Source of the DNA: Asterias rubens
Lineage: Eukaryota
DNA length: 64,000 nt
NCBI RefSeq assembly: GCF_902459465.1
Contig: NC_047072.1
Span: 11,966,001-12,030,000, forward strand
Direction: 5' to 3'
Under the pieces are notes generated by a model, which was not told the origin of the DNA, ran no database searches, and saw only the letters and a program-made list of their open reading frames with translations. The position numbers were made by a program, and so were the translations under genes. Positions 1 to 25,153 of this stretch are shown here, in pieces. The stretch's first letter is position 1. Every line of letters begins with the position of its first letter.

Positions 1-3000
1 TGCTCTGAGAGCTCCTCGTCCTTCTGTTTAAGATCCGTGCCATGTTCCTTCTTCTCGTCTTCCGTTTTTACTTCCTTCCCTGCGTCCTTTGGGGATTTCA
101 CCCTGGACGCCTTCTCCTCTCGTCGTTTCGCCTCCTCCGCAGAGAGCGCCCGTTGCTGCTTCTCAGGGGGTGGGCGCGGCACCTTGGGCTGCTCGGCCGT
201 GGAGGTCGCCTTGCTCACCATGAGAGGCTTGAAGTTGGTCGGGGACACGCCCTGTTTCAGTTTTGTAGGCGGTTTGATGAGACGATTGCTGTAAATGTTT
301 CGAACTTCAAGCTCTTTTTCTTTTTCCTGGCAACGAGAAGTAAACAAATCGATAAAGAGAATTTTAAGAGTAATGTACTAGATGGGTAGAGCTGGCTAAA
401 CATTAGCAGACAGTGTTCATGTTTTTTGTGATCAACAATACACATGTACATGAAAAAAACAAGCAGATATGTTTTTCAAATAAAAACCACCAGGGAAACT
501 GAGTAAATTTTAAATGATTTAGGGTTGAACAATGACAAACTGAATCTGAATAGAGTAGATCCCTTGGGTGTGATCCCAGGTTACACGACATTTAATGGCT
601 TCTAAATGGCACCCCCGACAACAGATTTTGGCATAATAGAGAGAACACCAACGTACTTGTAAGGCTGGATAGCTCAGTTGGTTTAAAAAGCACCAGCACG
701 AACATTAGTTCAAATCCCGCTCCAGTAAATTTGTCTTTGTTTAACCCCAAATAATTTTGTGAAAATTATGGGACCATTAGAAAACAAACATTAGTATTTA
801 AAACTTATAATAATCGGTTTTTTTAATAGCGCTTTACAAACCCAAAGGGCGTGTCAAAGCGCTTCAAACATTATGGTCACTGGGCCATTTTATTCATTCC
901 TTAAACCATCTCAGCTCCCTGTGGAGTATATACAAATATACGCTACTAAGCTAAATCAATCAAAAGAACCATCTCTGCTCTCACAGGTACCCATTTACCC
1001 CTGGGTTGGAGAGAAACAATAGTAATTAAGTGACTTGCTCAAGGACGCAAGTTTCTAGACCGGGACTCAAATACACACTACATGTATTTAACACTCACTC
1101 TGAGTTGTAACTGATATCGTTCGTTCTCCATCTCCAATCTCTCGATCTGACCCATCAGCTCTTGTTCCTTGGTCTGTCTCTCGTGGAGCTCATGTCGTTG
1201 GTTCTTCTTTATATTAGCCACGTAGCGTTCCAGATCCCTCACCGTCTTGTCTCGTTTCTCGACTTTCTCCTCCATACGCTCGACTCGGCGCTGGAGCTCG
1301 TGCCTCTCCAGTAGACCCTTGTCTTCGGCGACGCCCTTGATGTGTTTCAGCTCGTCTTGGGTCTGATTGAGCTGCTCGTCTTTGTCCTTTATACGTCGAT
1401 CTCGGTCTTTGTCGCGCTCCTGTTTATGACAGAAATGTATCAATTAGTTCTCACTATTTTTTACCGTGTAAAGGCATGTATGAACCAAATTAGGCAAACC
1501 CGTGCTTAACACGCAAGCTAGCCACCTAATTTACTTGTCAACCTGTGAAATTCTCTCACCATTTAATTTTTTTTTAAAATAAAACTAGTTTATTAACTGA
1601 AATTTGTCTGCTATAGTTGCTATGAAAATTTGCTTTTTGTTAAGCAGCGCTATTGAACAAATTTGCATTAAAAGTCAACACAAAACTTCAGACTACACCT
1701 AGGCCATGACGTAAGCATGTGTGACAGGCACGAGACACTATTGGTAATTACTAAAAATAATTGCTAGTATAAAACTTACTTAGTAACGAGTTTTTTTTTC
1801 TTTATTTATTCACTTGCCACTTCTTTACCAATTGAGTCCAAATTTGCACACATGTGTTAGTGTATACTTATTTTGGTTTACACCGAATGAGAACACTGGT
1901 GACAGTCTGAGAGAATATTGGTCTGGGACAATAACCAAAGATGTCCAGTTGCCCCTAAATCTTGCTACAATTTACCTGATACTTGCGTATTCTACGACGC
2001 ATGCTATCCAGCTCCGCGCTGTGCTTCTTAAGCATCTGCGGCAGCTCGCTCTCCTCAGCATCGTACTTGGACAGCGCCCTCTCTTGTCGGCGCTGGAGCT
2101 GCTTCAGGAGTTTGTTCTCGCGCATCGTCTCATCGTGCTCCTGCTGTAGCTGGTTGAACTCATTGCGGAGCCGGCTGATGGTGTGTCCCTTGGCGGAGAG
2201 CATGCGTTTTTGCACCTCCGTGTTGCGGGGTGAGGCCTGGCTGCTTGCTATGCTGTTGGAGCGCTTGGTGTTGTTGGCAGCAGCGGGTTTCTTGATCGGG
2301 GTTTTCTGGAAAGCTAATCAAGTTAACAGAATGTTATTAATACTAGTGTTCTGCACAATAAATGCAAAAAAAATAATCAAGATGAAATAGATTGATTTAA
2401 AGAAAGGTGCGGATATCATTCACAAATTATATATTTAACAATTTACATTAGGCGAGTCCTGAAGGACAATCTCTTCACTTTTGCCACAAAATCTAAATGG
2501 ATTGAAGAACACCATGTTGCATTCTCGGGGCTTCCTCCATGGGTACACTAAGTACAAACTGTTCAAAAAGTAAAAATATTACACTTACAGGCTCAGTTTA
2601 ACCATTTATAGCTCTATTCTATACAGAAACTATTTTACTTAAAGCCATTGGACCCTTTCGGTACAGAAAACAAAATAAAAGTTCACAGATTTACAAATAA
2701 CTTACAGGGTTTAGAGAAGGTAGTGGTGAAAGACTTCTCTTGACATATTATTTCACGAAATGCTTTACTTTTTGAGAAAACAGTAAAACAATATCAATTC
2801 TCGATATAGCGAGAATTACGGATTTATTTTAAACACATGTCATGACACGGCGAAACGCGCGGATACAAGGGTGGGTTTTCCCGTTATTTTCTCCCGACTC
2901 CGATGACCGATTGAGCCTAAATTTTCACAGGTTTGTTATTTGATATAGAAGTTGTGATACATGAAGTGTGGGCCTTGGACAATACTGTTTACCGAAAGGG

Positions 3001-6000
3001 TCCAATGGCTTTAATGTTGACTTCATTAAATCCTTCAAAAAAATTTTAATCCACAAATAAAATGTAAATAAATAAACATATTTCAGCCATAACTTTTAAT
3101 TGTCTTCAAGGTTTTTTAAAAAGTGTTTTTCATAAAATGTCAAGTAATAATTCACAATGCAAACTGACCGGGCTAAATTTTAAAAGATTTAAAATCTGTC
3201 ATTATGAGCAAATTCCTTACGGGGCTTCAAATAGTCAGACAGAGCCAAATCCATAATCTAAAAAAAGGCCATTAGGCACTTTCACAAAAACATAGAACTG
3301 GAAATACAACCCTTGCCATTTACCTCTGTGTGCATCCAAGTATATGTAGCACAACAGCAATCAAGGGTCAAGGGACCAGACTTTCCGTTTGGGAATCAAG
3401 AAGTGTCGTGGCCGAACGGTTAAGAGCACCGAATTCAAACTCTGGTGTTTCTGATCAGCAGAGTGTGGGTTCGAATCCCTAGCCGTGACACTTGTGTCCT
3501 TTAAGCAGGACACTTAACCATCGCTTCGTCCTTCGGATGGGACGTATATATGCAAAGCCGTTGGTCCCAAGGTGCTAAACAATTGGGTCTCAGAATTCAT
3601 CACTGCAATAACCTATCTTTCTGAAAGTTTGTATAGATACTCAGCGCCTTGAGTACATGTACCTTGTTTGGTAGATACGTGCGCTATATAAGACTTTGAT
3701 ATTATTATTATTTTATATTAAGATGGGTGCCATCCAAAACAAGTGGCTGATAAAACAAAATTCTAACCAATCATTCTCCCCTTTATTACATGCGTCACTA
3801 GAAAAATACTAAGCACATGTTGGAAATCAATGAATAACAAATCAATAAAAACGTAACTACATGTAGCACAGCCGATTTAGGCCAAATAACAAACTTAAAA
3901 AAACATGTTTATAAATAGCATCCTCACTTTTTTGAAAAAAAGGAAGGAGGAGGGCCTTTTATTTTTTTATTTTCTTGTTAGTTTTAAATGGCCACCCCAC
4001 ATTTTTTAATACAAACAGTTGGGCTATTTTTCAAATATGTTTTTTTTTATGCTGAGATTGTGAAATTTATATAAATTCTTTATTTTCATAACAGAAATAG
4101 AACATAAAAAATTCAGGAAAAAAAAGAAGGTCGGCCTCTAAAAAGGAAGCGGGCGGGGATGCTAAACATGTTCTTAATTTTTTTTGGCCTTACAGGTATT
4201 AGTAATACTGTTAGATGCTCTGGGCGCCTTTCGTGCGTACACGTACGTGATGAAGACAAGATGTCCACACACGCTTATCTTCATGCCGGTCTCTTAATTA
4301 CACGAATGACATTCAATACAATGCGACCTTGCCTGCATAACGTCAGATACATACATCTTCATTCAGATCCGTCACCAAGGCAACAGCCAACCAAAGGAGG
4401 AAATTCGACCCAATAAAGAAACTTACAAACAGAGAACTTGCAAATGGAGGCATAATGAAAAACACATCTAGATGTTTGTATCTGGACTTGCTTACTGCCC
4501 GTCTTAAACATTCATGAATGAAAAGTGACATTGTATCAAAATGACATGAGATAATTATGAGGAGTACAGCAATAGTGAGCCAAGTGCTTTCAAATTGCAT
4601 GTACACCATGTATATCAAACTCTAAATTACATGCAGGAATAATATCAATAGTAACACAGCATTGGTTAACCGTAGTGCAAGATGATGATATCCCAGAAAA
4701 TGCTGCACAAACCATCGCCAAAACATCTTACATGTAGGAATAATATCAATAGTAACACAGCATTGGTTAACCGTAGTGCAAGATGATGATATCCCAGAAA
4801 CTGCTGCACAAACCATCGCCAAAACATCTTACATGTCAGTAGGAATAATATCAATAGTTGGTTAACTGTAGTGCAAGATGATGGTATCCCAGAAACTGCT
4901 GCACAAACCATCGCCAAAACATCTTACATGTAGGAATAACATCAATAGTAACACAGCATTGGTTAACCGTAAGTGCAAGATGATGGTATCCCAGAAACTG
5001 CTGCACAAACCATCGCCAAAACATCTTTGTGTATTTTTTAGGGTTGATTACATGTATCATTTTGTAACGTCAACGAGGGTGAAGGTTTTTTGAAAACACT
5101 GCTGAGAAGCTAAAGAATTTTGGAACTCAAGAATTAATTGTTTTATTGTAATGTACAGTAATAAAAAAAGAAAAAAAGAAAAAAAGAAAAAAAGAAAAAA
5201 GGAATGATCAGTGTTCCTTTATCTCTTGAAATCTATCCTCTCGGCCCAATTTCATAGAGCTGCTTTTTATTTTAAGCAATAGGCCTACATTGTAAATACT
5301 GCTATTGCATAGAAGAAATTCTGCTGAGCAAAATATACAAGCAGGACACCTGTCATAGATTGTATATGTGCTAAAAGTGCAAGTGGTTTTTTTTTTGCGG
5401 GGGCTGGGGGGGGGGGCGCATTGTTCTTACAAGCACAATTTTGTTTGTCTGGCTAAGCGAGACTATGAATTTTTTTTGCTAAAAAAGCAGCCCTATAATG
5501 TTGGGCCCTGGCCTGCATATCAGGGACTAATTTCATAATTGTAAGCGCGGACACTTGCGTATCACAGAAAACTCAATTGCACCCTTGCTCTGGTGAGATG
5601 TACAAGAACAAAGAGCTAATTCCAGTAGCTTTATAAATACTGCATATCTCTTTGGAACTCCTTGCCTTGTGCATTTTTTTCCTCCACCCCATGATCTAGA
5701 CTGTTTTAATAGGAATATCAATTTCTGCCTTCAGCTCACAACCCCTACACGTATGTACCTAGTAATTTTCATATTTAATATTTTTCTTCTTGTAGCCCCC
5801 TTACTAAGAGTGACTTTTAGCCTTGTTTGGGGGCGAACTTGCATTCAAATATTACCTTTGGTTTTTGAAGAAACTGTAACTTTGTTTAATGTTATGTATA
5901 CAATAAAACTAGCAATTGAACATTTCTTTTCAAAAGTTGGTCCCTCTTTTTAGAAATCGGAGTGAATATTATTTATGTTCAGTCAGGCAGAATAATCCCA

Positions 6001-6777
6001 AAAGAAAAACGTTTCTGACAGTAACGCTTCTCAGATTCTAATATTGGGGTGTAAAAACTAAATATGTTTTTACATAACCACATAACTTTGATGAGAAAGG
6101 TTTTCAAACTAATTCTTTATTCAATCGAAAGCTGTTGTAGGCTTCTAACCAAAACCTCTTACTGCTATTAAAATTAGGAGTTATTACCAAACGTACCCTT
6201 TTAACTAAGCTGACTTAGTCTATTCCCACAAACAAATCTCACCTTTCTTATTCCGGTTGTTTTTGGCGCCATAGTTTGAGCTTCCTCCATGGCTCCTGAA
6301 CGTTGATCTACTATCGTGACTTGTACTGCTATTGAACCTAGTCGTCGTGTCCCCGTTACTTCTCTGCACTGACCTCACTCTTCCCTTCCTGCTCGGCTCC
6401 TTCCTCACGGGGGACCCCTTGCGTGAGTCTTGATCCGAGTCTTCCGAGTTGAAGGAGTCCGAGTAGTCTGGCGACCTGTACGGGCTCCTATACGGGGACC
6501 TTGACCGAGATCGGGAAAGTGACGGCGAGTCGTCGTAACGACGAGACCGTACCGACTTCTTATTCGACATAATTGAGTCTGATGATTTTGCGGAGAAGTT
6601 CCCAGAGGTTGAAGGGGTTAGGGATTTGATTCTTGGTGTATGCTTACTGACGGGGTCTTCATCGACAGGGGATTTGCCGCGGTCATACGCTCCTTTTAAG
6701 TATGGGCTGCTGACTTTATGATTGTCCTGCTCCCCGTCCGAGTCGAAGAAGGAGTCATTATCGTAAACGGCAGTCAT
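1..6777 (-). CDS. LCA5: Lebercilin (LCA5/LCA5L family) coiled-coil ciliary protein, 3'-partial. Coding exons 6777-6243, 2313-1976, 1419-1099, 326-<1
   Basis: All junctions GT-AG and phase-compatible. Spliced translation includes VQKRMLSAKGHTISRLRNEFNQLQQEHDETMRENKLLKQLQRRQERALSKYDAEESELPQMLKKH and EKEKELEVRNIYSNRL, matching the lebercilin domain. ATG at 6777 has an in-frame TGA two codons upstream. A small extra exon between 6243 and 2313 cannot be excluded. Confidence 0.9.
806..1075 (-). mobile_element. tRNA-derived SINE, partial
   Basis: Minus strand has a degenerate B box, GTCCTTGAGCAAGTCAC and CCCAGGGGTAAATGGGTACC central blocks, and an L2-like GCGCT...TTATT tail. Related fragment at 48665-48780. 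Confidence 0.6.
2643..3010. mobile_element. Kolobok-type MITE, family B
   Basis: TTAA on both sides; TIR AGCCATTGGACCCTTTCGGTA; AG...CT ends. Other copies at 40721-41084 and 49475-49660 (partial). Confidence 0.8.
3400..3712 (+). mobile_element. tRNA-derived SINE with L2-like tail
   Basis: A box TGGCCGAACGG, B box GGTTCGAATCC, GTGACACTTGTGTCCTTT..GGACACTTAACC block, tail GCGCCTTGAG..GCGCTATATAAG..(TAT)n. Confidence 0.8.
3880..4189. mobile_element. Zator/Harbinger-like MITE
   Basis: GGCC...GGCC ends with AAACATGTTT subterminal inverted blocks; TTA on both sides. Second copy in opposite orientation at 50498-50869. Confidence 0.65.
4626..5030. repeat. Minisatellite, about 100-bp unit, 4 copies, in an LCA5 intron
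   Basis: Unit TTACATGTAGGAATAATATCAATAGTAACACAGCATTGGTTAACCGTAGTGCAAGATGATGATATCCCAGAAACTGCTGCACAAACCATCGCCAAAACATC repeated with small indels. Confidence 0.9.
5587..5850 (+). mobile_element. CR1/L2-group LINE 3' end, degenerate
   Basis: Homologous to 13790-14052; residual SLWNSLP-like coding block and the same 3' tail. Confidence 0.65.
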
Positions 6778-7111
6778 CACTCAGGTTGGAGTTGTCCCTT
6801 TGACGTTTCTCAGCTGATGTCTTGTTTAGGAGTGAACCTTGATAGAGTAAAAGGAAAGATGATATATATATATTTTGTAATTCATTCTTGAGTTTTGGTC
6901 ATAATCAGTCTCCCGTAATCATTGGGACCCACTAAGTGCACAAGTTTGTTTCCTTCAGCAATGGCTCAAATGAAAGCTTGTAACTTTCTCGACCCCAATC
7001 AAAATACCTGAATTTTAAATCAAAATTGTTGGGTCAAATCGGCCAAACATCTGACAAAGCATCTTTAATGACCATAAAAATTGAGTGAATTGATTCATTA
7101 CACAAGATTAA

Positions 7112-7515
7112 AGACACTGGACCCTATTGGTAATTGTCAAAGACTAGTCTTCACAGTTGGTGTAACTCAACATATATGCATAAAATAACAAACCTGTGAC
7201 AATTTGAGCTCAATCGGTCGTCAAAGTTGCGAGATATTAATGAAAGAAAAAAACACCATTGTCGCACCATGGTCCCACAAAGTTGTGCGCTTTCAGATGG
7301 GTGACTTCGAGACCTCAAGTTCTAAACTTGAGGTCTCAAAATCAAATTCGTGGAAAATTACTTCTTTCTCAAAAATTACGTCACTTCAGAAGGAGCTGTT
7401 TCTCACAATGTTTTATAATATCAACCTCTCCCCATTAATCGTAATCAAGAAAGGTTTTAAACAAATATTTTATGATTATAATTATTTTGAGTAATTATCA
7501 ATATGTCCATTGCCT
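7112..7515 (+). mobile_element. Kolobok-type MITE, family A
   Basis: TTAA flanks; TIR AG(A/G)CA(C/G)TGGACACTATTGGTAATT; internal GAGACCTCA..TGAGGTCTC hairpin. Confidence 0.85.
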
Positions 7516-8148
7516 TTAAATCCATGTTCTCAGAATGTCTGGCATGATTTTATTTAATTTTAAAGTGGTAAAAATTGGGCAAATGTAGTGAATCGTGAAT
7601 CGTCTGACAATAATTGTCCAAATTGCCTCTTCAGTTGTTTGTCTATTACTGTCGGTAAGATGGATGGTTATGATTATCGCAACTAGTGAAAATAAATGAG
7701 ACACTTGTGTAGATTCCAGGTAGTATCTTCACTTTTGTTTGATTGCAATTCACAATCATTGTTTGCACAGCCACAGTACCGACACTGTAAACAAAACGCC
7801 CAGTTTGATTTGAGCCAAAAATGCTGGCAAAATACCTTGCAAAGGTATGCAGTGTCCAGGGTACGAAGTGGCAAAGGTACGAGGTGTCCTGACAACATAA
7901 TGGCAAGTTCGCAAGTAAAAAGTGTGAGATTTGTAACCCACTTCAAAATCAATTTTTTTTTTTAAACAAAGGACAAACAGATGCTGTCAGTGTCAACTCA
8001 AAGTCAGTTGTCAGCTTTTTATTCCTTTAAAGTGTTAGTGCGACCGCCAGTCTGCCAGTCCACGACTTACATTTACAGAGTGTCACTGTTTCTGTTCAGC
8101 GACAATTCATGCCACATTGAGTATTGAAAGATAAAATAATAACCTTTT

Positions 8149-8283
8149 GGATAACTTTCCGTATGGCGCCACCACTTTTCACTCATTTTTACAAAAAAGG
8201 ATATCTCATTGAGGTTAATTTGGTACTATATTATTTCATTTCACATCAAATTAAAAAGTGGTGGCGCTATACAGAAACTTTTT
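8149..8283. mobile_element. Short GG...CC MITE (Merlin/hAT-like), degenerate copy
   Basis: TIR TTCCGTATGGCGCCACCACTTTT, same family as 18713-18848. Confidence 0.7.
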
Positions 8284-8618
8284 GATTTTGAATGTCAATG
8301 TGATGATGATGGCAAAGAAAAAATGCTTTGTATTTGCATGATTTGGACTGGTGTATCATCATTATTTAAACTTCAAATCAAAGCTGCAAGCAAGGTAGTA
8401 AATCATTAATTTTATTAAAAAATAGCAAACTGTCAGTCAAAATCGTCACTGCACATTATCAAACATGAAATATTAATTATTAATGAAGATAGGCCGATGT
8501 ACTTCTGCACAAAATAAACATTACATTCGATTCGAAATCAACTTCTTCGCATTCGCTTTTTCTGATTTGTACGAAAGTTAAGATAAAAAGAGGCTATACA
8601 AATTGAAAGTCATATTAC

Positions 8619-8950
8619 CTGGCAACATTTGACGTGCATTATCATCAGCCACATTGGTATTAACAATTTATGAATTGTGTATATCAAAGAATGACAGTTT
8701 TATTAGCCATGTTTTATCTCGCAAAGTCGCACATTGAAGAAAATCACTGAAGCTGTTTTTGCTCGTTGAGGAATGGCATGCATTGCGCGAGCGCTGTTTA
8801 CTTGCTATGGAGATTGTCTGGAACGAGAAAACAATTGACCGCTGGTCACAAAACATTCCGTCGGATTTGTATGTGTATGTCACCGAGTACCAGTGAAATG
8901 TCGTCGAACAAAGCGCCTGCTACGCGATGGGTTTTGTTGTTTATAAGTTA
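8619..8950 (-). promoter_or_regulatory. Putative LCA5 non-coding first exon and promoter
   Basis: Donor CAG|GTAATATG on minus at 8619/8618, CpG-richer stretch 8700-8950, and an acceptor in front of the first coding exon near 6838 that requires an upstream exon. TSS not determinable. Confidence 0.4.
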
Positions 8951-11900
8951 GACAGGGATAGTATCCATTAAAATAGTATACTCAATCCTAGACGTCTAGG
9001 AGCCAGACATTCATGGTGCTTTAAATCCTCAGAGCCGATGTGGTATAGTGAAAAATGCTGAAAAGAGGGGTGTGACATGGCTTGACAGACATCCCAAAAT
9101 ATGGATCTTTAAAAGAATCATGGATACAGAAAACAATATTTCTGGATGATACGGATAACAAATCTGAATCTTATTCAGTTGTGTCGTATCTCCCACCATA
9201 ATTCTTCACAACTTTTAAAAGGAAAATATTCATCACTAAGTTGGATACCTTTAAAAAAAGGTTGAGTATAAAACAAAATCTGTGCCTGTAGCTAGAATGT
9301 CAAGTTGACATCCAACAACGTACCGCACCAGTAAACATTTGCATACACCGCCATGTGTAAAATACTGACACCAAAAGAGGCGGGGGGGGGGGGGGGGGGG
9401 CCTTCGCCCATTGACCACCCCCCCCCCCTAAAAAAAAACATGATTGGAGAAAGGGAATTGTGGCTCTAAATAACAAGTACTAATTTTCTCAAAGTCCAAT
9501 GACATGACATGGATGGGAAGGACATGTGTGTGAAATTCCTTGATAGCCTAGAATGGACCGTTCCACTTAATCTAAGAGGTTTTGGTCATGTCTCATAATT
9601 AAGATTGGTGTTTTTTTGTTTACAGGGTTATGTAATGAAGTCACTTAGATGTAAACATATCGCGATCGACATACGCACAGCAGCTAGACGTCTTCCTCCC
9701 TCATCGACGAGGGAGGAAGACGCATGGCATAATTGTACATGTGGGAGTGTTTTTAGAAAACACTTCTATCCTATCCTTGCTGCATGATTTTAGCGTTAAA
9801 AATTGATTTGTTATAAAATGTTACAAATATTCCACTCAGGGATTTTAGGGGTGAATTAAAAATAGTTAATATGATACAACCATTATTAACGTTCGAAAAG
9901 TAGGGGTGCTATAGCATATTCCAGCACCCCTTCGTTTTGGGTAGGGGTGCTCATTTGCAACACCAACAGCACCTCCGCTCTCGCGGGCCTGAACATTGTT
10001 GGAATTAATATCACAATGTATTTATTGTTTTAACCCTACTACCACCCGTTCCCCCCCCCCCCCCCCCAATCATGTTGCGCACCGTCTTCCAGGTAAAAGA
10101 AATTCTCGGGTATCGGACCATGGAGCAATATAATATTGCTCCATGGTCTGCCCTGACTCCCCTTGTGGTCCCCTGCTGAATTGAAACGCAAAACAATTGA
10201 ATAGATGGATATTGCCCCCCCCCCCCCCCCCCTCACCACCACCACCCCACCACCACCACCACCACACCCCGGGCAAAATAATGACTCCACCGGGGATCGG
10301 ATCCAGCCGGTGGGGTTGGATATTCCCATTAAAGGCAGGGGAATCACCATCGTTCTTCTATATAGAATGCTAACATAGCTACATAACTTGAACATGAGGT
10401 GATCTATCTAATTTCATCATCACCTGCAAAAGCAATCTCTTCAACTCACTCCCTTGAAATACCATAGACGCGAGCAGCAGTCTCAACTGGGCGCAGCTGC
10501 TACGCAAGTGAGATGGGGATGGGTTGGCAATAACATAGTTATTAGTCCGGGAAATATTGAGTGCAAAAGGTTCGAGTTGTGGGATGTGCAGGGCCCCCGT
10601 GGGGAACCTTAAAATGTGAATTCTTAAGCGCAGTGAGTGGTGCGTTGGGAGGGGGGAGCCCCCTAAACTCACCCCAAAAGTCCATTTAAATGAAATGTTG
10701 AGTGCAAGCAAAATTTCTTCATATATTGAAATGCCATGGTCCACTGACTATGAATTCCGTACTTAAGAAAATAAATAATGGTGCTAAGTGTACTTAAGAA
10801 GGCCCTTAATTAGTGCTAATTAGACGTTTAAATGAAATTTTGAGTGCAACAATGAAACATGTGTCAAAGTGTACCTTAGACTGTGCTGACTCAAAACCTA
10901 TATGGTCTACTATCCGTGTGACACTCAGCGGCCACAATAATTGTGTTTTCTGGTTTTCTCTCCACGTGTTTCTGGAGTGTGAGTTTTGGAAGGTTAAACC
11001 ATCTCTATTATAACGGCTCAAAGAGTTTATGTTCCAAAAAATGATGCAGACAAGTTTCTTGTGCGTAATTCGTTGTCGTTATTTTTTTAAGCGGCTTGTT
11101 GTTGTACTTGCTCAGGCAGATGCTCAGCTCTGTGATTAGTTTGGATTAGATTAGATAAGATTATATAGGACTCACTTAAAAAAAAAAAAGTTCTGTTGCT
11201 GTTATTTTATGATACTAATACAAAAGAAAATGCGTTGGGTCTAATAATATTATATTAAATATTAATAGACTATTAATAATAGAAGTACATAACAATTATC
11301 AAGAAATTAGTAAAAGAATGTGAAATGACACCCAAAGTACTCATTAATGATAACTGTAAAAATATCATAATAATGATAACATTACAAGATTTCAAAGGGG
11401 ATCTTCAAGAAAAACTGACAGATTTTGTATAGTATTCAAAATGAGCCGGCAAAAGCCATTATCAGTTCAACAACAAGAGCATCTTTAAATTCAATTTGTC
11501 CCCAGAAATGGGGAAAAAACTTAACGGGTCATTCTTCAAAGAATGACAGGAAGAAAAAAAACACACGTGAAAGAATGTAAGGGCCTCTGAAGTTACGTGC
11601 ATGCGCTTCGGGTGTTTTTCTAGTCGCAGGTAGCCACAAGCAGCCAAGGGGCCCCAGAGCCTGTGACTGTAAGCCTTTAAGTTTGCTAAGCACAGAAAAA
11701 AATTGCGCAGCAGAAACTGATACCAGCCAAAGTTCCTTAAAGTTGACATTGTTGCAGTTGGTGCCCCAGTCATATTTTGCTTATCATCTTAAAAATTGCT
11801 AAGAAGCTTTAGGATGTTGTGCAGGCGAGTGGGCGTGGCGCGTGGCTGCAAAAGAGCGCCCTCTTCGGGCTGCAGCTGAGGAATCCGGACAAAGTGCGCT

Positions 11901-12009
11901 GTCAAAGATTTGGTGTGCGGAGATTTTACAAAAATAGTCCAAATAGCAAAGGTATTTGGCAGATTTCTCGTTGATTCTGCTCCGAAAGTGTGCATTTTGA
12001 TACGCAATC

Positions 12010-14353
12010 ATGGTTATCAAATTCTATTTCTCCACCATTACATCGACGTTAGAGGTAGGTTCGTTGTTGATTTTACGCGAACAGTGTTTCTAATATTGTT
12101 TTCTATTCCCTCTCATGTGAAAAGTGACGACGATGCAAACGACGGGGAGCTCTCAACCATCGGTCTCTCCTCTCCGTTGCATTGCATGCAGTCAGTTTTT
12201 TTCCCCAGTGCATCCATCATTGCAACTGCACACATGTAACGGAGACAGGCGGTCAGATAAATGCAGACTGTCATTGCATTTTTTTCATTTTGTTTAACCT
12301 GTAGTTCTACCTCCATCCATGTTTTAACGATCAGTGTTCAAAATTTTAAACGGCTGTTCCGGGCTGCTTTAGTTAAGCAGAAAATATTGCTTAATTAAAT
12401 TTTTTGCGAAGCAAAAATTATCAGTAATCAGATTCAGGGACAGATTCAGGTCAGGGCAAGCACAGATGTAGATGACATTGACAGACAGTCCACTCCAGCC
12501 ACATTGTTATGTGACTGATGTGGAATGACTGTCTGTCTAGGTATTCTGATTTTAAAATGAGAAATGGTCAATATTGGCTGAAGCATAATTTTGTTTTGTA
12601 AATGTTTACAAGCATAATTTTGTTGTGTGCTTATCTATTTTCTGTGAAATGGGTGTGATGACATGTTAAATGTATGTATTACACTAATTGATATTAATTA
12701 TAAGGGAATAAGACTGAGAGTACTGACTCTGTCTTGAACATTCGTTTAAAACCGGCAGTTGCGGCTCATTGCTGCATGCTGCAACCATGTAAGGTTTTAA
12801 TGACTGGGGAAATACTATTTATTCCCATTTATAAATGCCCTTTTATTTATGTTAAAAAGCGTAAGTAATACTGATGGAAAATCTGTCAAATATTTAGCTT
12901 TTCTGGTTTGCAAACTGATCACTAGTCATAGTCATACATAGTGTGTTCTTTGCGCATGTTCTTTGATTCCGAAAAATTTCTTTTGGAGCGTTTCAAGTGG
13001 CAAGGCAGTGAACAGGGCTCAATTTCATAGAGTTGCTTAAGCAACAAAATCCTTGCTTAGTAAAATCAGATTACCGGCCAAGACTCCACTCAATTGTTAT
13101 GCTAAGTGAACAACAGCTAAATACCAGCCACAAGCAATGTGTATGGCCTGAGATTTTGGCCAGTAACATTTGAAAACAAGCAAGCTATTTTCGTGCTTAA
13201 GCAAGTTTTTTTGCTTAAGCAGCTCTATGAAATTGGCCCCAGGCTGTTGTTTTGATGCTAGCCCTGGTAGGACGTTAGTCAGTGCCACTGCACTTGTATG
13301 CAACAGAGGAGTCCAACCTGGGCTATTTTGATGCATGCTGTCTGAATAGAGGTTCAGAGCTTTGCAGCTGACACAGTATCTCGGATAGTTTTGAAAGATT
13401 GTAACCACATCTTTTCCTCGTCTGATGCAGATGGAGAAAAATCAACGGAAGATTGATTTTGTTCTGTCTTCCAAAGGGTATGATCTGGAAAAGATTGACA
13501 TAGCCACAAACCAAGAGGCAAAGCACAAGATGAGAGAATTGTTGAACAACCCTAAAGCCTTGCCGCCTCAAATCTTCAACGACGATGTTCATTGTGGGGT
13601 AAGGCGAACTCTTAAGGAAATTTTAAATTACATTAAAATTAATTTAACTGTGTTTGCCTCTGAAAGCTCATTAGGTAAACAGTTGGCACTGCTGAACTGA
13701 AAAATATTCCATCAGAAATGTTGTCATCTTTGGGAACACCTAGTAAAGCATGGACAATGGAACATGGAAGAAGCAAATATCCTTATAGTATATACTGTGG
13801 CTGTGCCGAGATGTAGAACAAAGAGCTACTCCAGTAGCTTTTTCCCTCGTAGTGCATCTCTGTGGAACTCCTTGCCTGGTGCATGTTTCCCTTAATCCTA
13901 TGATCTGAGAGGAATGTCAACTCCTAATTCCTACCTTCAGCTCCACTGAGTTTCTGCATACGGGTCTTTGTTTTCTTCCTTGTAGCCCTTAACCTAGAGT
14001 GGCATTTAGCCTTGTTTTGGGCAACTTGCATAGTAAAAAAAAGAAAAAAAGAAATATGGATCCTAAGTTCCAAAGTGGCGAATATCTTTTGTACATTATA
14101 TTACTTTTAGATGTGGTTATCTGAGTGCAATTAGCTTCTTTTTTAGTCTAGTGCAGTTAGCGAAGAATGGTGATCGTATAAAAAACACAGAATTCAGGGG
14201 TAAGCGGAGCCATGAAATTTGACCAAGATCATTTTCTTATTAATCAGTTAATAATTTCATATTTTTTTTGTCTTGTTTTCATTTTTGTAGGACTTTGATG
14301 CCTTTGATGCTGCTGTCGAGAATGAGACACTGGATGAATTCCTCAAGCTGTAG
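12010..14353 (+). CDS. SH3BGRL: SH3BGR-family thioredoxin-fold protein, copy A (91 aa). Exons 12010-12054, 13431-13598, 14291-14353
   Basis: MVIKFYFSTITSTLE|MEKNQRKIDFVLSSKGYDLEKIDIATNQEAKHKMRELLNNPKALPPQIFNDDVHCG|DFDAFDAAVENETLDEFLKL*. Family motif LPPQIFN...CGD; phase-0 GT-AG introns. Confidence 0.92.
13790..14052 (+). mobile_element. CR1/L2-group LINE 3' end in SH3BGRL-A intron 2
   Basis: Translates YTVAVPRCRTKSYSSSFFPRSASLWNSLPGACFP, a typical ORF2 C-terminus, followed by a 3' UTR and A-rich tail. Confidence 0.8.
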
Positions 14354-14589
14354 AGTCGTTTCTTCGGCATCGGGAATGAAAAACCGTCATCCTTCTAAAG
14401 GAATTTCTTACTAACCCAACTCTAACAGCTCAGAATCTTCCCAAAATTCATCTGTTGCTTTTGTTCCATTTTGGTTCATAGCACTCTGCTCTAATGACGT
14501 CACTTTTGCTCAAAACACAGATGTCGGACACAAATTTGAGAACTCACGTGATCACCACATGGCATTGGGCTGGCATGACAGCAGTAGTA

Positions 14590-14941
14590 TAGTCACACAC
14601 AAAAAACTGCACTTTATACAGTGCACTCACCTACAAATGCAAAAACGGATCAGCACCAGACTATCTCCAGGATTTAATTCAACACTACCACCCTCCGCGA
14701 ACACTTCGTTCCAGTTCAAAAGGTCTTCTCATAGCAGCTCCAGTTCACACGAAGTTCTACGGTCAACGTTCCTTCCAATATGCTTCACCTAGACTATGGA
14801 ACTCTCTTCCCAACAATCTCAAAGACTGTGCCACACTAGAACAATTTAAATCACGACTTAAAACCCATCTCTTCAATCACAGAAGCGCTTAGAGACTTTA
14901 TTTTGTATTATGCGCTATTTAAGAACTGTTTATTATTATTT
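14590..14941 (+). mobile_element. L2 LINE 3' end
   Basis: Translates LTYKCKNGSAPDYLQDLI...YGQRSFQYASPRLWNSLPNNLKDCATLEQFKSRLKTHLF, then GCGCTTAGAG..ATGCGCTATTT..(TTA)n tail. Confidence 0.88.
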
Positions 14942-16962: not shown

Positions 16963-17345
16963 AGGAACACGTTGCTTTGGATCGGTCGAGTTGGTCTTTA
17001 AAAAAACATTTGTAACCGTTTGTTATAAAATGCATATGATTAGAAAGATATTTTAAAAGTAGAATATAATGATCCACACAAGTATCATTCGAAATTGCGT
17101 GGTTTCCTTTTACTTCGTTCGTCGACTTAGTCGGCCATTTATTGGAGTCAAATTTTTTTCTTTCCATAAATGGCCGACTGTGTTAGTTCCCAAAGTAAAA
17201 GGAAATCCAAGCAATTTCGAGGCAAATTTGTGTGGATCATTGTATTCTACTTTTAAAACATCTTTCTAACCAAATGCATTTTAAAACAAACGGTTACAAA
17301 TGCTTTTCAAGGACCAACTCGACCGAGCCAAGGCAACGTGTTCCT
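16963..17345. mobile_element. Kolobok-type MITE, family D
   Basis: TTAA flanks; TIR AGGAACACGTTGC(C/T)TTGG.TCGGTCGAGTTGGTC. Confidence 0.85.
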
Positions 17346-18477
17346 TTAAAATCTGTGGACATTGTGTTTTGTGTTAAAAAAACAAAACAAATAGTGGTAT
17401 TCAGTATGTTTAAATGTTATTCTTTCATAGTGCTCATTTATTTATTGTTGCTGAAACTAATAGTGTGCAATCTCAAACACTCAAACCCCCTTTTGATAGA
17501 GAGAGAAAGGTAGAAGGCAAAATTTATATTTGTTTCAAAAACTTTTTCGTAAAAGTCCTTCCAAACTGTTTTGCTTCATTTGAAAATTTGCTTGATTTTG
17601 TTAACTTGTTTAGTGCTTGTTTTGGGCTAGGGGAAAAATAAATAATTTAAGTTGAAGTAGAAGTGAGTGATATTTTATTTGCCTTTTTTAGAGCATAGAA
17701 ATAGAATTTGCAATCACGAATGCATGAATTTATTGATTAAAATGACATTAAATATGTTCAAAATTAAGAAATTAAGTACCAGATTGTGCCGTGAATGCTT
17801 ATTTATGTACTGTGACTTGTTGACCCCAGAATTTACCCTGATTTTGTTTACACAAAAATTTATTTATTTATTTTTTTTGGTGGGGGTGGGGGGGGGGGCG
17901 GCTGTTCCCTTATTTTCTTGACCATAGTCTAATGTGATTGAGGATCTTGGATTTCAATTAGCATCAATCGATCAAAAAAGTATTGGTAAATTCACAGATG
18001 ATTTCTGTTGGTTCTTCATACATGACTTTGAGGAGAGTTTCAACAACATTTATTACAAGAATAAATCAATTTAATTTAATGAAGAAGAAGAAAAAATTCC
18101 TTTGTTTTTTTGCACAGAACTTGGGAAAGCACACAGTGCTTATATTTCACACATAAAAGGGTAAAACCAAAAAATAATAATAGGTTCAATGCACAAATTC
18201 CTTAGCCCAACAACAATTTACCCACTGGGGAATGGAAGCGCCCATCATCGAGGTCAGCCAGTGACCTCAAAAATAAATTACCATATCAAGTCTATAGGTC
18301 AAATAGTGGTTGTTTTGTTGCAGCAGTTTGGGGCACGGTCGTTTTTCACTTCACGCTCAACTAGTCCAGCTTTTTGTAGGTGTGGTGTGTGGATTCCGGA
18401 AGTTGAATTGAGCTGCAGTCAAGAATTACTAACATTTTGCCTTCATTTCTTCAAAGAGTCACATTTGTAACGCCACC

Positions 18478-21400
18478 ATGGGTATCACAGTGTACGTTTC
18501 GACGGTTTCGTCAAACGTGGATGTAGGTTTTACCGTTTAATTGAAGTGCTAGACTAGAATAGAGTGAACAAAAAATAAAACCAATGCCAAGAATGAAGGA
18601 GGGCAAAGCGCACTGACTCAGTCTTGGTGGTGTTCGGTCTGTTGTTGTCTTGTCGGGTTGTGTGTACGTGCACATTTTCCACAGTGCAGTTTACCCCAAA
18701 ATAAAAACATTGGGATAACATTCCGTATGGCGCCACCACTTTTTCACAAATTTTTACAAAAAAGGATATCTCATTGAGGTAAATTAGATACTATATGTAT
18801 TATTTCATATCAAATGAAAAAGTGGTGGCGCCATACGGAAACTTTTCCAAACATTGTTTCTGGTCGTATTTGAGTTTGCTTGAGTCATGATTTTAAATGT
18901 ATCCTGGTGTCATGTGTTTTCAGTCATATAGTCATCATGGTCATCATATTCATAGTCATAGGGGCCTACTCTCTCATTAGTCATATAGTCATATAGTCCT
19001 ACTTTCTAGGAGTGGAACAGTTTTGTTATCCTGCCATCACTTTTTCATTTGTTAGGATGTCTGAAATGAAATAATGTCTAATTTACTCACAATTATGAGA
19101 TATTCCTTTTTGTTATTAAAAATTACACATTAAAAAAGTAGCCATACACCTACTCCGGTTTCGTCCGCTATCGTCTCCCGTAGCGGGAGACGATAGCGGT
19201 CGGCTCCGAAATAGTTCTAGGAGTACCCAAAACCCAAGCATTATTTGTAAAGATTTCCGTATCCTGCCACTACTTTTTCACAAATTTTTACTAATTTATT
19301 AAAAGGAAGATCTCATAAAAAAAATTAAGTAAATAAGATCTAATCTTTTTCATAATGAATGAAAAAGTGGTGGCAGGATACATAGTTTGTTTCCAAAAAT
19401 GGGCGGGGCATATTAAGGGGAGAGTTGGATAAGTTGAGGCACTTTTGGGTCAAGTTGACATTAACGCTAATATCAGCAGGGGAGGGCCTATATGGTAAAT
19501 ATAGTGTCTTGATTGACCAATGCAGCCTGCATAGTGAGATGGGCAACAATACGCCTCTCTTAATTTGTATGCATGAAGTCGACTTCTTACCCAAAATGAG
19601 ACTATGGGCGCAAGTCCCCCATCACTTGCAGTGGCTGCGCTCATCGCCTCGTTTTGGGTTAGCATTGTGACGTACCTCATGCATAAATATTAAGAGAGGC
19701 GTATAGTGTCCAGAGTGCCTTTAAGGTGCAGTTTTCAAGGCTTATAACTTATATCCACACAATAAGTGTCATATCTTAAAAATTGTAGTTGGTCTTTTGT
19801 TACCTAACAAAAAATGGTTGAACTAAACACTTCTCATGTGGAATTCTTTAAAGTCACCTGGAAATAGATTTTTTCTTTCTTTCAAACATAAGAGTATATA
19901 CTTACGAACAATAAAACAATTTTTTTAGTAATTGTTTGTCACGATTTATATGTTTAAAAAGTATATAAAGTTGTTTGGGGGGCTGACTCCGCCTACCCCT
20001 TTTGTGCCGTCAATCGAGGCAGACTTTGCCTGAAATGCGTATAGTAAACACACGTGCAAAGTACATGTACGTCCAAGTCGTGAGTTGGTACATTTCAAAA
20101 AGTGTTTTTCTGCATTCAGCAGCAATACACCTGGTCGGCATTTTTTTTTAAACTTACAAACTCACGACTTGGTCCGTACATGTACTTGGCAATTGTGTTT
20201 ACTCTACGCATTACAGGCAAAGTCTGCCTCGATTGACGTCACGAACAGCGCCCTCTCGGGTCGGGGTCTACTCTTAAATTTGTAAATAACATAAGAACTG
20301 ATTTTTTAAAACCTTAGTTAACTGTTTATTCACATTCCACTCATCAAAACACATATATTAGTGACAAAAGCTTTATTTTGAAAAAATACCACTTCCAGGT
20401 GACTTTAACACCTACTTGTATAATAAATGTACATCTAGTGAGTCTAATTTGCTGTTCTTCTATTTCTATTCTGAAATCTATTTTGTAGATCAAAAAGCAA
20501 CAGCAGAGGATTAATATGATTTTATCCAGCAAAAAATTTGAGTTTGAAGAAGTTGACATCTCTTCGAGCGAAGATGACAAAGCAAGGATGAGAGATATTT
20601 GTAAGGATCCCAAAGCCCTGCCCCCGCAGATCACCAACGGTGACCAATATTGTGGAGTAAGTTATTTGACTTTAATTTTTTACTTTTTTTGTGTGTGCAT
20701 GTTTGCCTGTAAAAGGCTAAAAGCCACTCTTAGTTTTGGGGCTACAAGAAGACAAATTATTTAATGTGAAAAGAACTCAAGGGAGCCGAAGGTAGGAATT
20801 AATATTCCTCTTTAAAAAGTCTAGATTGTAGGATGGAGGGAAACATGCAGCAGGCACGGGGTTCCAAAGAGATGCAGTATGTGGAATAAAGATGTTGGTA
20901 ACCGGATTGCGACCAACCGATTGCCTCATTGGCCAAGTTTAATAAAGCTAAGAGCTTAAAAAGAAAACTGCTTAGCAAAGAAAAATGTAGTTTTGCAGAA
21001 GTTGGTTACTCGCACAAATCCATCTTGGATTAATAGGATTAATCCTATCTCGAGTTAGGACGAGTAACTTGTCCTAACTTGGACTGGGTTCAATGCGTCC
21101 TACGCCTTTGGATGTACCAAAATTAACTCGTCCTAAGTCCTAAGATTAAAGGACCACGTTGCCTTGGATCGGACGAGTTGGTCTATAAAAAGCGTTTGAA
21201 ACCGTTTGTTATTAAGTGTATATCGTTAGAAAGATGTTTTAAAAGTAGACTATAATGATCCACACAAGTATCATTCAAAATTACACGGTTTCCTTTTTAC
21301 GTCGCGAACTATCACGGTCGGCCATTTATGGGAGTCAAAATTTTGACCCCCATAAATGGCCGACCGTATTATTGGACGAGGTAAAAAGAAAACCACGCAA

Positions 21401-22221
21401 TTTCGAGGCATATTTGTGTAGATCATTGTATTCTACTTTTACATCATCTTTCAAAGACCAACTCGACCGCTCCAAGGCAACGTGTTCCTTTAATCCTAGA
21501 TTAGGAAGAGTTTGGTGAAATCGATGGCTGGGCACGATCAAAGGCAGATTGTATTCCTATTAAATAACTGTGTTTGGGGGCACAATTCTTGTTCCACTGG
21601 TCTGAACAAATGAACAGACGTTCACTGCAGCCGATTTCACGAAACCCTAGGATTAGTCCTATTTCGAGTTAGGACGAGTAACCCGTCTTAACTTAGGATG
21701 GGTTCAATGTGTCCTATCGTCTTTGGATACGGAACTGAACTCGTCCTACTTGTAAGTCCATCCCAAGTTAGGAAGAGTTTGGTGAAATTGACGGCTGGAC
21801 CCACATACTAAAGATTGAAGCATTCTGAAAATTTACACATGTGGAGATTACATGGTATTCAAAATCAAAGGATCAGGTTTTTGCGCACACAGTAGGATTT
21901 TGTGTGTGCACATTATATGGGTCCATAATAGTCTAAATCTGCCATTCCACACAAAATGTCAACCTCTGAGATTACCCACCCAGAAATCACTTCTATGAAA
22001 GAGTGATGTTTGCAGAATTGATCCACACATTTTGTAGTTATACAAAAAAAATGAAGCTGGTCTCTCCGCCAAAGCCCCTTGGCTGCTCCGAAAGTTAAAC
22101 TTGTTTATAACCTTTGTACTTATGAAACCCTTTGTTGTTATTGTTTTTGTTGCAGGACTTCGCAAAGTTTGAACTAGCCGTGGAGGATGAAATCCTGGAA
22201 GAGTTTTTGAAGCTTAAATAA
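18478..22221 (+). CDS. SH3BGRL: SH3BGR-family protein, copy B (92 aa). Exons 18478-18522, 20489-20656, 22156-22221
   Basis: Kozak GCCACCATGG. MGITVYVSTVSSNVD|IKKQQQRINMILSSKKFEFEEVDISSSEDDKARMRDICKDPKALPPQITNGDQYCG|DFAKFELAVEDEILEEFLKLK*. Same exon sizes and phases as copy A. Confidence 0.92.
18713..18848. mobile_element. 136-bp GG...CC MITE with 8-bp TSD AAACATTG (Merlin/hAT-like)
   Basis: TIR about 30 bp; exact 8-bp direct repeat at 18705-18712 and 18849-18856. Confidence 0.85.
19852..20404. mobile_element. Kolobok-type MITE (AGTCACCTGGAA TIR) in SH3BGRL-B intron 1
   Basis: TTAA at 19848-19851 and 20405-20408; inverted ends AGTCACCTGGAA / TTCCAGGTGACT. Confidence 0.8.
21150..21489. mobile_element. 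Kolobok-type MITE, family D, nested in another MITE
   Basis: TTAA flanks. Host (about 21020-21530) is homologous to the uninterrupted CAGCCGATTTCAC...GTGAAATTGACGGCTG element at 21629-21797. Confidence 0.85.
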
Positions 22222-24773: not shown

Positions 24774-25153
24774 AGGCAGTGGACACTATTGGTAATTACT
24801 CAAAATAATTATTATCATAAAACCTTTCTTGATTACGAGTAATGGGGAGAGGTTGATAGTATAAAACATTGTGAGAAACGGCTCCCTCTGAAGTGACTTA
24901 GTTTTCGAGAAAGAAGTAACTTTTCCACGAAGTTGATTTTGATACCTCAGATTTAGAATTTGAGGTCTCGAAATCACACAACTACGTGTGACCATGGTGT
25001 GACAAGGGTGTTTTTTTCTTTCATAAATACTGCGCAACTTTGATGACCGATTGAGCTCAAATTTGCACAGGTTTGTTATTTTTTGCATATGTTGAGATAC
25101 ACCAAATGTGAAGAATGGTCTTTGACGACAATTACCAATAGTGTCCAGTGTCT
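24774..25153 (-). mobile_element. Kolobok-type MITE, family A
   Basis: TTAA flanks; reverse orientation relative to 7112-7515. Confidence 0.85.

What the first reader, a model, noticed from the sequence alone, without database searches (positions are those of the whole stretch)
1..22221. Head-to-head LCA5 - SH3BGR gene pair, as in two human paralogons
Sequence: LCA5 (minus) and the SH3BGR-family genes (plus) are divergently oriented neighbours with no gene between them. Recalled knowledge: human LCA5-SH3BGRL2 (6q14) and LCA5L-SH3BGR (21q22) are adjacent pairs; SH3BGRL and the intron-containing CHMP1B2P both lie at Xq21; AMD1 lies on 6q. Inference: this window may keep a pre-vertebrate deuterostome microsyntenic block, possibly held together by shared regulation.
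Basis: partly seen in the sequence, partly recalled or inferred. Interest (0 to 1): 0.7.

Follow-up and report, generated by a model that had tools for sequence, protein, structure and literature searches.

The report
Ancient lebercilin–SH3BGR head-to-head gene pair
In this sea star the only gene for the cilium protein lebercilin (LCA5) sits head-to-head with the only two SH3BGR genes, and a hemichordate, a scallop and a sturgeon share this arrangement, so it is a real gene neighbourhood at least as old as bilaterian animals, and one more case of a known kind.

Summary
One lebercilin/LCA5 gene lies on the minus strand, from beyond the window start to a 5' UTR exon at 8617-8778. Two three-exon SH3BGRL3-like genes lie on the plus strand (11902-14353 and 18478-22221). 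Nothing else is between them: no Pfam, Rfam or tRNA hit, and no RNA contigs except on repeats. These are the genome's only members of either family.

The same divergent pair is found in Saccoglossus (ATG to ATG 996 bp), in the scallop Pecten (1,498 bp), in a sturgeon (SH3BGR<->LCA5L-><-WRB, the gene set papers report in one human 21q22.2 chromatin domain) and in Asterias amurensis. It was absent within 10 kb in amphioxus, the urchin Diadema, a hoverfly and a sponge. A lebercilin tree places the LCA5/LCA5L split inside vertebrates. So the pair is at least bilaterian, not just deuterostome.

A 16-nt X-box-plus-forkhead element is identical in Asterias, just upstream of the LCA5 RNA 5' end, and in the Saccoglossus intergenic region. 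It occurs once in this genome. This is a testable lead for shared ciliary-type regulation, which remains unproven.

In the sea star the transcript starts are about 3.1 kb apart, so this is not a classical bidirectional promoter. It is a new member of a known kind (conserved ancient microsyntenic pairs). No paper describing it was found, and the scan had not noted it before.

The parts
1..326 (-). Lebercilin/LCA5 exon (end of the lebercilin domain, '...EKEKELEVRNIYSNRL...'). It continues past the window start, and further exons lie up to about 7.2 kb to the left.
   Evidence: tblastn of Acanthaster lebercilin-like P0010; open frame across the window start
1099..1419 (-). Lebercilin/LCA5 exon, C-terminal half of the lebercilin domain
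   Evidence: PF15619, 61.8 bits; 67% identity to P0010
1976..2313 (-). Lebercilin/LCA5 exon, N-terminal half of the lebercilin domain. The acceptor at 2313 is required by phase 1 of the preceding donor.
   Evidence: PF15619, 82.8 bits; 88% identity to P0010, with the alignment starting at 2314
6243..6835 (-). First coding exon of LCA5 (ATG at 6777-6775) plus part of the 5' UTR
   Evidence: RNA contig pieces covering 6243-6835 in 3 of the 4 runs, and two contigs (6243-6569, 6585-6835) in the fourth; P0010 residues 1-177 align
6836..8616 (-). 5' UTR intron of LCA5 (GT..AG on the minus strand). It holds a very abundant SINE-like repeat at about 6957-7520.
   Evidence: Joint 6835->8617 in all 4 runs; very high contig depth over 6988-7578
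8617..8778 (-). Non-coding first exon of LCA5. The longest transcript contig ends at 8778.
   Evidence: tables 5 and 8
8795..8814 (-). Candidate composite X-box (RFX) plus forkhead site, read in LCA5 sense as ATCTCCATAGCAAGTAAACA. Its 16-nt core CCATAGCAAGTAAACA (8795-8810) is identical in Saccoglossus and A. amurensis.
   Evidence: unique in the 417.6-Mb genome
8779..11901 (.). Spacer between the two transcript 5' ends (about 3.1 kb). No gene is present. It contains dispersed repeats at 9659-9995, 10550-10896 and 11664-11806, and homopolymer G/C runs near 9380-9430 and 10050-10250.
11902..12054 (+). SH3BGR gene a, exon 1 (ATG at 12010, 15 codons, phase-0 donor)
   Evidence: RNA contigs 11902/11932/11949-12054 in three of the four runs
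13431..13598 (+). SH3BGR gene a, exon 2 (core of the thioredoxin-like SH3BGR domain, with the motif ALPPQIF)
   Evidence: PF04908, 36.7 bits
14291..14353 (+). SH3BGR gene a, exon 3 with the stop codon. The product is 91 aa.
   Evidence: 100% match to the A. amurensis annotated 91-aa gene
18478..18522 (+). SH3BGR gene b, exon 1 (coding part)
   Evidence: A. amurensis orthologue P0002
20489..20656 (+). SH3BGR gene b, exon 2
   Evidence: PF04908, 43.5 bits; 58.1 bits
22156..22221 (+). SH3BGR gene b, exon 3 with the stop codon. The product is 92 aa.

Best explanation
The window holds a conserved ancient microsyntenic pair: the single lebercilin (LCA5/LCA5L pro-orthologue) gene and the SH3BGR family, transcribed divergently from a common intergenic region.

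Shown: the two families are immediate head-to-head neighbours in sea stars, a hemichordate, a scallop and a sturgeon. Papers show they are neighbours twice in human. The LCA5/LCA5L split is vertebrate-specific. The adjacency therefore dates at least to the bilaterian ancestor and was copied by the vertebrate genome duplications. In the sea star lineage the SH3BGR gene was duplicated in tandem.

Inferred: the ancestral state was a compact spacer of about 1 kb or less acting as a two-way promoter, as still seen in Saccoglossus and Pecten. A break there would damage one or both genes, so selection on the shared promoter-proximal region kept them together. The lebercilin side of that region carries an RFX X-box plus forkhead site, the signature of the cilium gene programme, which may also act on SH3BGR.

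In the sea star, repeat insertions have stretched the spacer to about 3.1 kb, and each gene now has its own distinct start.
For: Adjacency and orientation:
- Saccoglossus: SH3BGR(-) ATG at 9004 and lebercilin(+) ATG at 10001.
- Pecten: SH3BGR exons at 8502-8464, 6055-5870 and 5162-5103 (-), lebercilin ATG at 10001.
- Sturgeon: SH3BGR(-), LCA5L(+), WRB(-).
- A. amurensis is collinear with the window at 90-95% identity.
- Human: PMC9276112 and PMC6088800.

Gene content and orthology:
- The genome has one lebercilin locus and two SH3BGR loci, all here.
- In the tree, vertebrate LCA5, LCA5L and cyclostome genes form one clade (SH-aLRT 89) and the ambulacrarians form another (99).
- The 15-codon first exon and its phase-0 intron are the same in the sea star, Saccoglossus and Pecten SH3BGR genes.

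Regulatory leads:
- The 16-nt CCATAGCAAGTAAACA is identical, and in the same orientation relative to lebercilin, in Asterias (17-34 bp upstream of the RNA 5' end) and in the middle of the 996-bp Saccoglossus spacer.
- Only 2 of 300 shuffles gave a shared word that long, and the word occurs once in the genome.
- In human, one eQTL raises WRB, LCA5L and SH3BGR together.
- A GeneHancer promoter element at SH3BGRL2 is linked to LCA5.
- Cooperation of RFX and forkhead factors on cilium genes is established (PMC10393296 and bioRxiv 10.1101/085571, listed).
Against: The pair is not obligatory. No SH3BGR lies within 10 kb of lebercilin in amphioxus, Diadema or a hoverfly, and the sponge Corticium has no lebercilin next to its SH3BGR.

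In the window the two transcript starts are about 3.1 kb apart. In human, LCA5 and SH3BGRL2 are tens of kb apart (coordinates). A shared core promoter is therefore not needed today.

X-box-like matches are not more frequent than in shuffled sequence. The Asterias site misses the 14-nt IUPAC consensus at 2 positions.

No co-expression data were obtained for the sea star. Contig depth cannot rank genes, and one of the four runs shows LCA5 but not exon 1 of SH3BGR gene a. No paper links SH3BGR proteins to cilia.
Confidence: 0.6

Rival explanations
1. Passive retention. The adjacency is ancestral but neutral. It survives only in slowly rearranging genomes (scallop, hemichordate, sea star, vertebrates), because a spacer of about 1 kb is a very small target for breakpoints. 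The two promoters are independent.
For: The pair is lost in amphioxus, Diadema and a fly without obvious consequence. In the sea star the spacer has tolerated repeat insertions and is now about 3.1 kb, with separate starts. X-box counts are not above chance. The lineages that keep the pair are, from general knowledge, those known for conserved synteny.
Against: Retention of both the adjacency and the 5'-5' orientation in four lineages separated by more than 500 million years, and in both human duplicates, is what Irimia et al. 2012 found to exceed neutral expectation for such pairs (PMC3514665). A 16-nt non-coding element is conserved between two phyla inside the spacer. Human eQTL and GeneHancer data link the neighbours.
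Confidence: 0.3
2. Bystander or regulatory-block model. Enhancers of one gene, or of a third neighbouring gene, lie inside the introns or flanks of the other, so the genes cannot be separated even though their promoters are independent.
For: In human, LCA5L, SH3BGR, WRB, HMGN1 and BRWD1 share one TAD and eQTLs. LCA5(L)-WRB adjacency is also conserved between amphioxus and sturgeon. This is the second mechanism described for conserved pairs in PMC3514665.
Against: Neither gene is a developmental regulator of the type that usually anchors such blocks. The conserved feature is the 5'-5' junction itself, with about 1 kb spacers in two phyla. WRB is 2.6 Mb away in the sea star.
Confidence: 0.08
3. 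Chance or convergent adjacency, or an assembly or annotation artefact.
For: None specific. Only one assembly per outgroup species was examined.
Against: A specified pair among roughly 20,000 genes being immediate neighbours has a chance of about 1e-4 per genome. Here it recurs with the same orientation in five independent assemblies (and the window). RNA contigs confirm the sea star exons.
Confidence: 0.02

Closest known systems
Conserved ancient microsyntenic pairs (CAMPs) in 5'-5' orientation, Irimia et al. 2012 (PMC3514665), e.g. HSPE1-HSPD1
   Same: Two unrelated genes kept as immediate neighbours, in divergent orientation, across distant animal phyla. The intergenic distance is short in compact genomes.
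   Different: This pair is not named in that paper's main text, and its supplement could not be read. A shared promoter has not been demonstrated. The spacer is about 3.1 kb in the sea star and far larger at human 6q14.
Human LCA5-SH3BGRL2 (6q14.1) and WRB/GET1-LCA5L-SH3BGR (21q22.2)
   Same: The same two gene families are neighbours. The sturgeon shows the 21q22-type order and orientation directly. The sea star gene is the pro-orthologue of LCA5 and LCA5L.
   Different: The sea star has one lebercilin gene and a tandem pair of short (91-92 aa) SH3BGRL3-like genes without a Glu-rich tail. WRB is 2.6 Mb away rather than adjacent. Human gene orientations and exact distances rest on my memory, not on a tool result.
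RFX (X-box) plus forkhead (FOXJ1 / Fd3F / FKH-8) control of cilium genes
   Same: An X-box-like half-palindrome directly abuts a GTAAACA forkhead core, just upstream of the start of a known cilium gene. Factor cooperation of this type is described in PMC10393296 and bioRxiv 10.1101/085571.
   Different: Binding is untested. The X-box is imperfect. Whether the site acts on SH3BGR at all is unknown.

Membership tests
Lebercilin / LCA5 family (Pfam PF15619) | Lebercilin coiled-coil domain scoring above Pfam's gathering score | tested here: met
   82.8 and 61.8 bits for the two exons against a cut-off of 34.3; 85.4 and 66.4 bits in the genome search
Lebercilin / LCA5 family (Pfam PF15619) | Orthology to vertebrate LCA5/LCA5L (groups with animal lebercilins, single copy) | tested here: met
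   Tree: sister to Acanthaster (100) within the ambulacrarian clade (99), with vertebrate LCA5+LCA5L as a separate clade (89). It is the only locus in the genome.
SH3BGR family (Pfam PF04908) | SH3BGR thioredoxin-like domain above the gathering score | tested here: met
SH3BGR proper (vertebrate SH3BGR type) | Long glutamic-acid-rich C-terminal extension | tested here: not met
   Both products end right after the domain, at 91 and 92 aa. They resemble SH3BGRL3 in size. The Pecten neighbour, by contrast, is annotated with 492 aa.
Conserved ancient microsyntenic pair (Irimia et al. 2012) | Unrelated genes that are immediate neighbours in several distant metazoan lineages | tested here: met
   Sea stars, hemichordate, bivalve, sturgeon; human from papers
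Conserved ancient microsyntenic pair (Irimia et al. 2012) | Conserved 5'-5' orientation | tested here: met
   Divergent in the window and in L010, L012 and L016
Conserved ancient microsyntenic pair (Irimia et al. 2012) | Presence in the published list of pairs | not testable with these tools
   Supplements of PMC3514665, PMC4729200 and PMC4085046 are not held. The pair is not in the main text.
Bidirectional-promoter gene pair (starts less than 1 kb apart) | Divergent transcription starts less than 1 kb apart | tested here: not met
   In the window the RNA 5' ends are at 8778 (minus) and about 11902 (plus), roughly 3.1 kb apart. In Saccoglossus the ATG-ATG distance is 996 bp, so the criterion is met there.
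RFX/forkhead cilium regulon | X-box matching GTHNYYATRRNAAC near the start | tested here: inconclusive
   2 mismatches in Asterias and 1 in Saccoglossus. Hit counts are no higher than in shuffles. However, the composite 16-mer is conserved and unique.
RFX/forkhead cilium regulon | Dependence of expression on RFX/FOXJ1, and factor binding | not testable with these tools
   Needs ChIP, CUT&RUN or knock-down

The most novel reading that the evidence does not exclude
The lebercilin-SH3BGR junction is a roughly 600-million-year-old two-way cilium promoter. One RFX/forkhead module drives both genes in ciliated cells, which would mean the small thioredoxin-fold SH3BGR proteins have an unrecognised, ancestral role in cilia alongside lebercilin. 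The pair may predate bilaterians.
Probability: 0.15. Interest if true: 0.6.

Novelty: new member of a known kind. Interest (0 to 1): 0.4.

Why it matters
The result gives a clean, datable example of a gene neighbourhood that survived from the bilaterian ancestor into both copies made by the vertebrate genome duplications.

It also pinpoints a short, testable non-coding element at the junction. If the neighbours share regulation, that would suggest a cilium-related role for the poorly understood SH3BGR proteins. It would also be relevant to reading regulatory variants at the human LCA5 (Leber congenital amaurosis) and 21q22.2 loci.

If they do not share regulation, the pair is simply one of several hundred conserved pairs.

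Tried and rejected
- X-box scan with GTHNYYATRRNAAC (1 mismatch or fewer) in eight lebercilin upstream regions: counts were no higher than in shuffles, so enrichment is not claimed.
- Shared k-mers among four spacers: only weakly above shuffles overall. The informative hits were the forkhead word and the X-box half.
- NRF1, ETS, YY1, CRE, E2F and ZNF143 words: scattered one-mismatch hits and nothing consistent.
- Rfam and tRNA scans of 1-23000: nothing.
- Pfam on nine intergenic ORFs: nothing, apart from a sub-threshold TMCO5 hit.
- Word-indexed protein searches with both SH3BGR exons returned only 9 and 3 proteins and no vertebrate ones. No SH3BGR family tree was built, so the orthology of the four human paralogues rests on general knowledge.
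- Look-ups that failed because only the longest isoform is on record: Saccoglossus P0014, Pecten P0053, Anneissia P0012, sturgeon P0045. The crinoid, brittle star, lamprey and tunicate were therefore not examined.
- Literature: no paper held LCA5 + SH3BGRL2 + synteny, or SH3BGR + microsynteny. Papers naming both genes are clinical or GWAS reports.
- No complex prediction was run: neighbouring genes alone are not a reason to claim binding.
Full report
**What is in the window**

The window is sea star DNA: G000, contig 12, from a 417.6-Mb assembly. The nearest named proteins are from Asterias rubens and A. amurensis.

On the minus strand, two exons carry the two halves of the lebercilin domain. 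Exon 1976-2305 scores 82.8 bits and exon 1099-1419 scores 61.8 bits against PF15619, whose cut-off is 34.3.

tblastn of the Acanthaster lebercilin-like protein P0010 lays out the rest of the gene:
- the first coding exon at 6243-6777;
- the next exon beginning at 2313, a phase-1 junction that matches the donor seen in RNA;
- then 1099-1419 and 1-326;
- three more blocks reaching about 7.2 kb to the left of the window.

Contigs of four runs from four studies join 6835 to 8617 across a GT..AG intron on the minus strand and run on to 8778. The runs are labelled RNA only by guess, but they show this splice. The gene therefore has a non-coding first exon at 8617-8778 and spans about 16 kb.

On the plus strand lie two small three-exon genes of the SH3BGR family, PF04908:
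- Gene a: exons 11902-12054, 13431-13598 and 14291-14353; 91 aa.
- Gene b: exons 18478-18522, 20489-20656 and 22156-22221; 92 aa.

They share the same 15-codon first exon and the same intron phases. The RNA contigs end exactly at the predicted donor at 12054.

**Nothing lies between them, and these are the only copies**

The 3.1 kb between the two RNA 5' ends (8778 and about 11902) has no Pfam-bearing ORF and no Rfam family or tRNA. Transcript contigs are essentially absent there. At least three stretches are dispersed repeats: 9659-9995, 10550-10896 and 11664-11806.

A six-frame search of the whole genome finds one lebercilin locus and two SH3BGR loci, all in this window. The only correction is that the lebercilin gene reaches 8778 on one side and runs off the window on the other.

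**Other animals**

I took lebercilin relatives from an exhaustive HMMER search, named them and looked at their genomic neighbours.

| Species | Arrangement |
|---|---|
| Saccoglossus kowalevskii | 96-aa SH3BGR gene (-) head-to-head with lebercilin (+); ATG to ATG 996 bp |
| Pecten maximus | upstream minus-strand gene, unannotated for Pfam, carries the three SH3BGR exons; ATG to ATG 1,498 bp |
| Acipenser ruthenus | SH3BGR(-), LCA5L(+), WRB/GET1(-) |
| Asterias amurensis | collinear with the window at 90-95% identity, including the lebercilin 5' exon region and AMD1 downstream |
| Amphioxus | no SH3BGR within 10 kb (upstream PLA2; downstream WRB) |
| Diadema (urchin) | no SH3BGR within 10 kb (upstream CNNM) |
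| Hoverfly | no SH3BGR within 10 kb |
| Corticium (sponge) | SH3BGR has other neighbours |

The sturgeon trio is the gene set that papers report in one human chromatin domain at 21q22.2. 'Absent' here means only 'not within 10 kb'.

**Human**

Papers confirm the recalled adjacencies. Duplications of 0.21-0.24 Mb at 6q14.1 contain LCA5 alone or LCA5 plus SH3BGRL2 (PMC9276112). WRB, LCA5L and SH3BGR lie in one TAD and respond to the same eQTL (PMC6088800). A GET1-SH3BGR read-through locus is named in PMC12147916. Orientation and exact distances in human are from my memory.

**Orthology**

A maximum-likelihood tree of 26 lebercilins puts vertebrate LCA5, LCA5L and the cyclostome genes in one clade (SH-aLRT 89). 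The ambulacrarians form another clade (99), with the window's gene next to Acanthaster (100). The LCA5/LCA5L split is thus vertebrate-specific. The two human pairs are most simply duplicates of one ancestral pair.

With a mollusc sharing the arrangement, the pair goes back at least to the last common ancestor of protostomes and deuterostomes. Amphioxus, Diadema and the fly are read as losses.

**How it may be held together**

The spacers are tiny in Saccoglossus and Pecten, so a two-way promoter is the natural ancestral state. That is the first of the two mechanisms proposed for such pairs by Irimia et al. (PMC3514665).

Comparing spacers, the word AAGTAAACA (a forkhead core) occurs in all four species that keep the pair. 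The 16-mer CCATAGCAAGTAAACA is identical in three places, each time in the same orientation relative to lebercilin:
- Asterias (window 8795-8810, minus sense);
- A. amurensis;
- Saccoglossus (L010 9427-9442).

It reads as an X-box-like half-palindrome, (GTTC/ATCT)CCATAGCAAG, abutting GTAAACA. In Asterias it lies 17-34 bp upstream of the RNA 5' end. In Saccoglossus it sits mid-spacer, 423 bp from the SH3BGR ATG and 559 bp from the lebercilin ATG.

A shared word this long arose in 2 of 300 shuffles. The 16-mer occurs exactly once in the 417.6-Mb genome.

Amphioxus and the hoverfly also have X-box-like sites near the lebercilin start, as expected for a cilium gene. RFX-forkhead cooperation on cilium genes is well documented (papers listed).

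In human, a GeneHancer promoter element at SH3BGRL2 is linked to LCA5. STRING groups the two families in one cluster.

None of this shows that SH3BGR uses the element. X-box counts are not above chance. The sea star starts are 3.1 kb apart. No paper ties SH3BGR proteins to cilia.

**Verdict**

The finding is a real and old conserved divergent gene pair, one more member of a class that numbers in the hundreds. I found no paper that names it, but it may sit in supplementary lists I could not read.

The most useful new item is the short conserved X-box/forkhead element, which makes the shared-regulation idea directly testable. Interest is moderate.

Noticed in passing
L009 30634-32964 (amphioxus); L016 16186-20133 (sturgeon); own genome G000:C12:9348437-9350701: WRB/GET1 (PF04420) lies tail-to-tail directly downstream of lebercilin in amphioxus and of LCA5L in sturgeon, with human WRB, LCA5L and SH3BGR reported in one TAD at 21q22.2. 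In the sea star it is on the same chromosome but 2.6 Mb away. This is a second conserved adjacency, possibly older than vertebrates.
   Followed up: partly
L007 10001-10421 and 14322-15287 (sponge Corticium candelabrum): The sponge SH3BGR gene lies 4 kb from a calcipressin (RCAN) gene. From memory, human RCAN1 and SH3BGR are both on 21q22, and RCAN3 and SH3BGRL3 are both on 1p36, so this may echo a very old linkage group.
   Followed up: no
L012 1-8502 (Pecten maximus): The scallop SH3BGR-family gene next to lebercilin is annotated with a 492-aa product and no Pfam hit on record. Only its first three exons are SH3BGR-like, so it has a long unexplained C-terminal extension.
   Followed up: no
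window 6957-7520 (also about 24786-25088, 28067-28339, 32689-32964, 38887-39162): A SINE-like repeat inside the LCA5 5' UTR intron is covered by thousands of contigs at summed depths of 2-7 x 10^5 in all four runs. It is a very abundant, transcribed repeat family.
   Followed up: no
window 4590-5060: A minisatellite in the LCA5 intron. Units of about 45-95 bp repeat an ORF-like 'FWRWFVQQFLGYHHLAL' frame on the minus strand.
   Followed up: no
window 46963-47196 (+): Exon with a weak Snf7/CHMP domain hit (PF03357, 28.1 bits).
   Followed up: partly
window 55264-55611 (+) and 62674-63696 (+): A SAP18-like open frame, and a 340-aa intronless seven-helix-receptor-like ORF. Both were judged by reading the translations only.
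   Followed up: no
window 8778-8787: ATGCATTGCG lies right at the LCA5 RNA 5' end and matches the 3' half of the ZNF143/Staf binding-site consensus as I recall it. The 5' half is not present.
   Followed up: partly
L015 18908-20726 (hoverfly): DONSON lies 7 kb from the fly lebercilin gene. From memory, human DONSON is on 21q22.1, so this may be a trace of the same linkage group.
   Followed up: no
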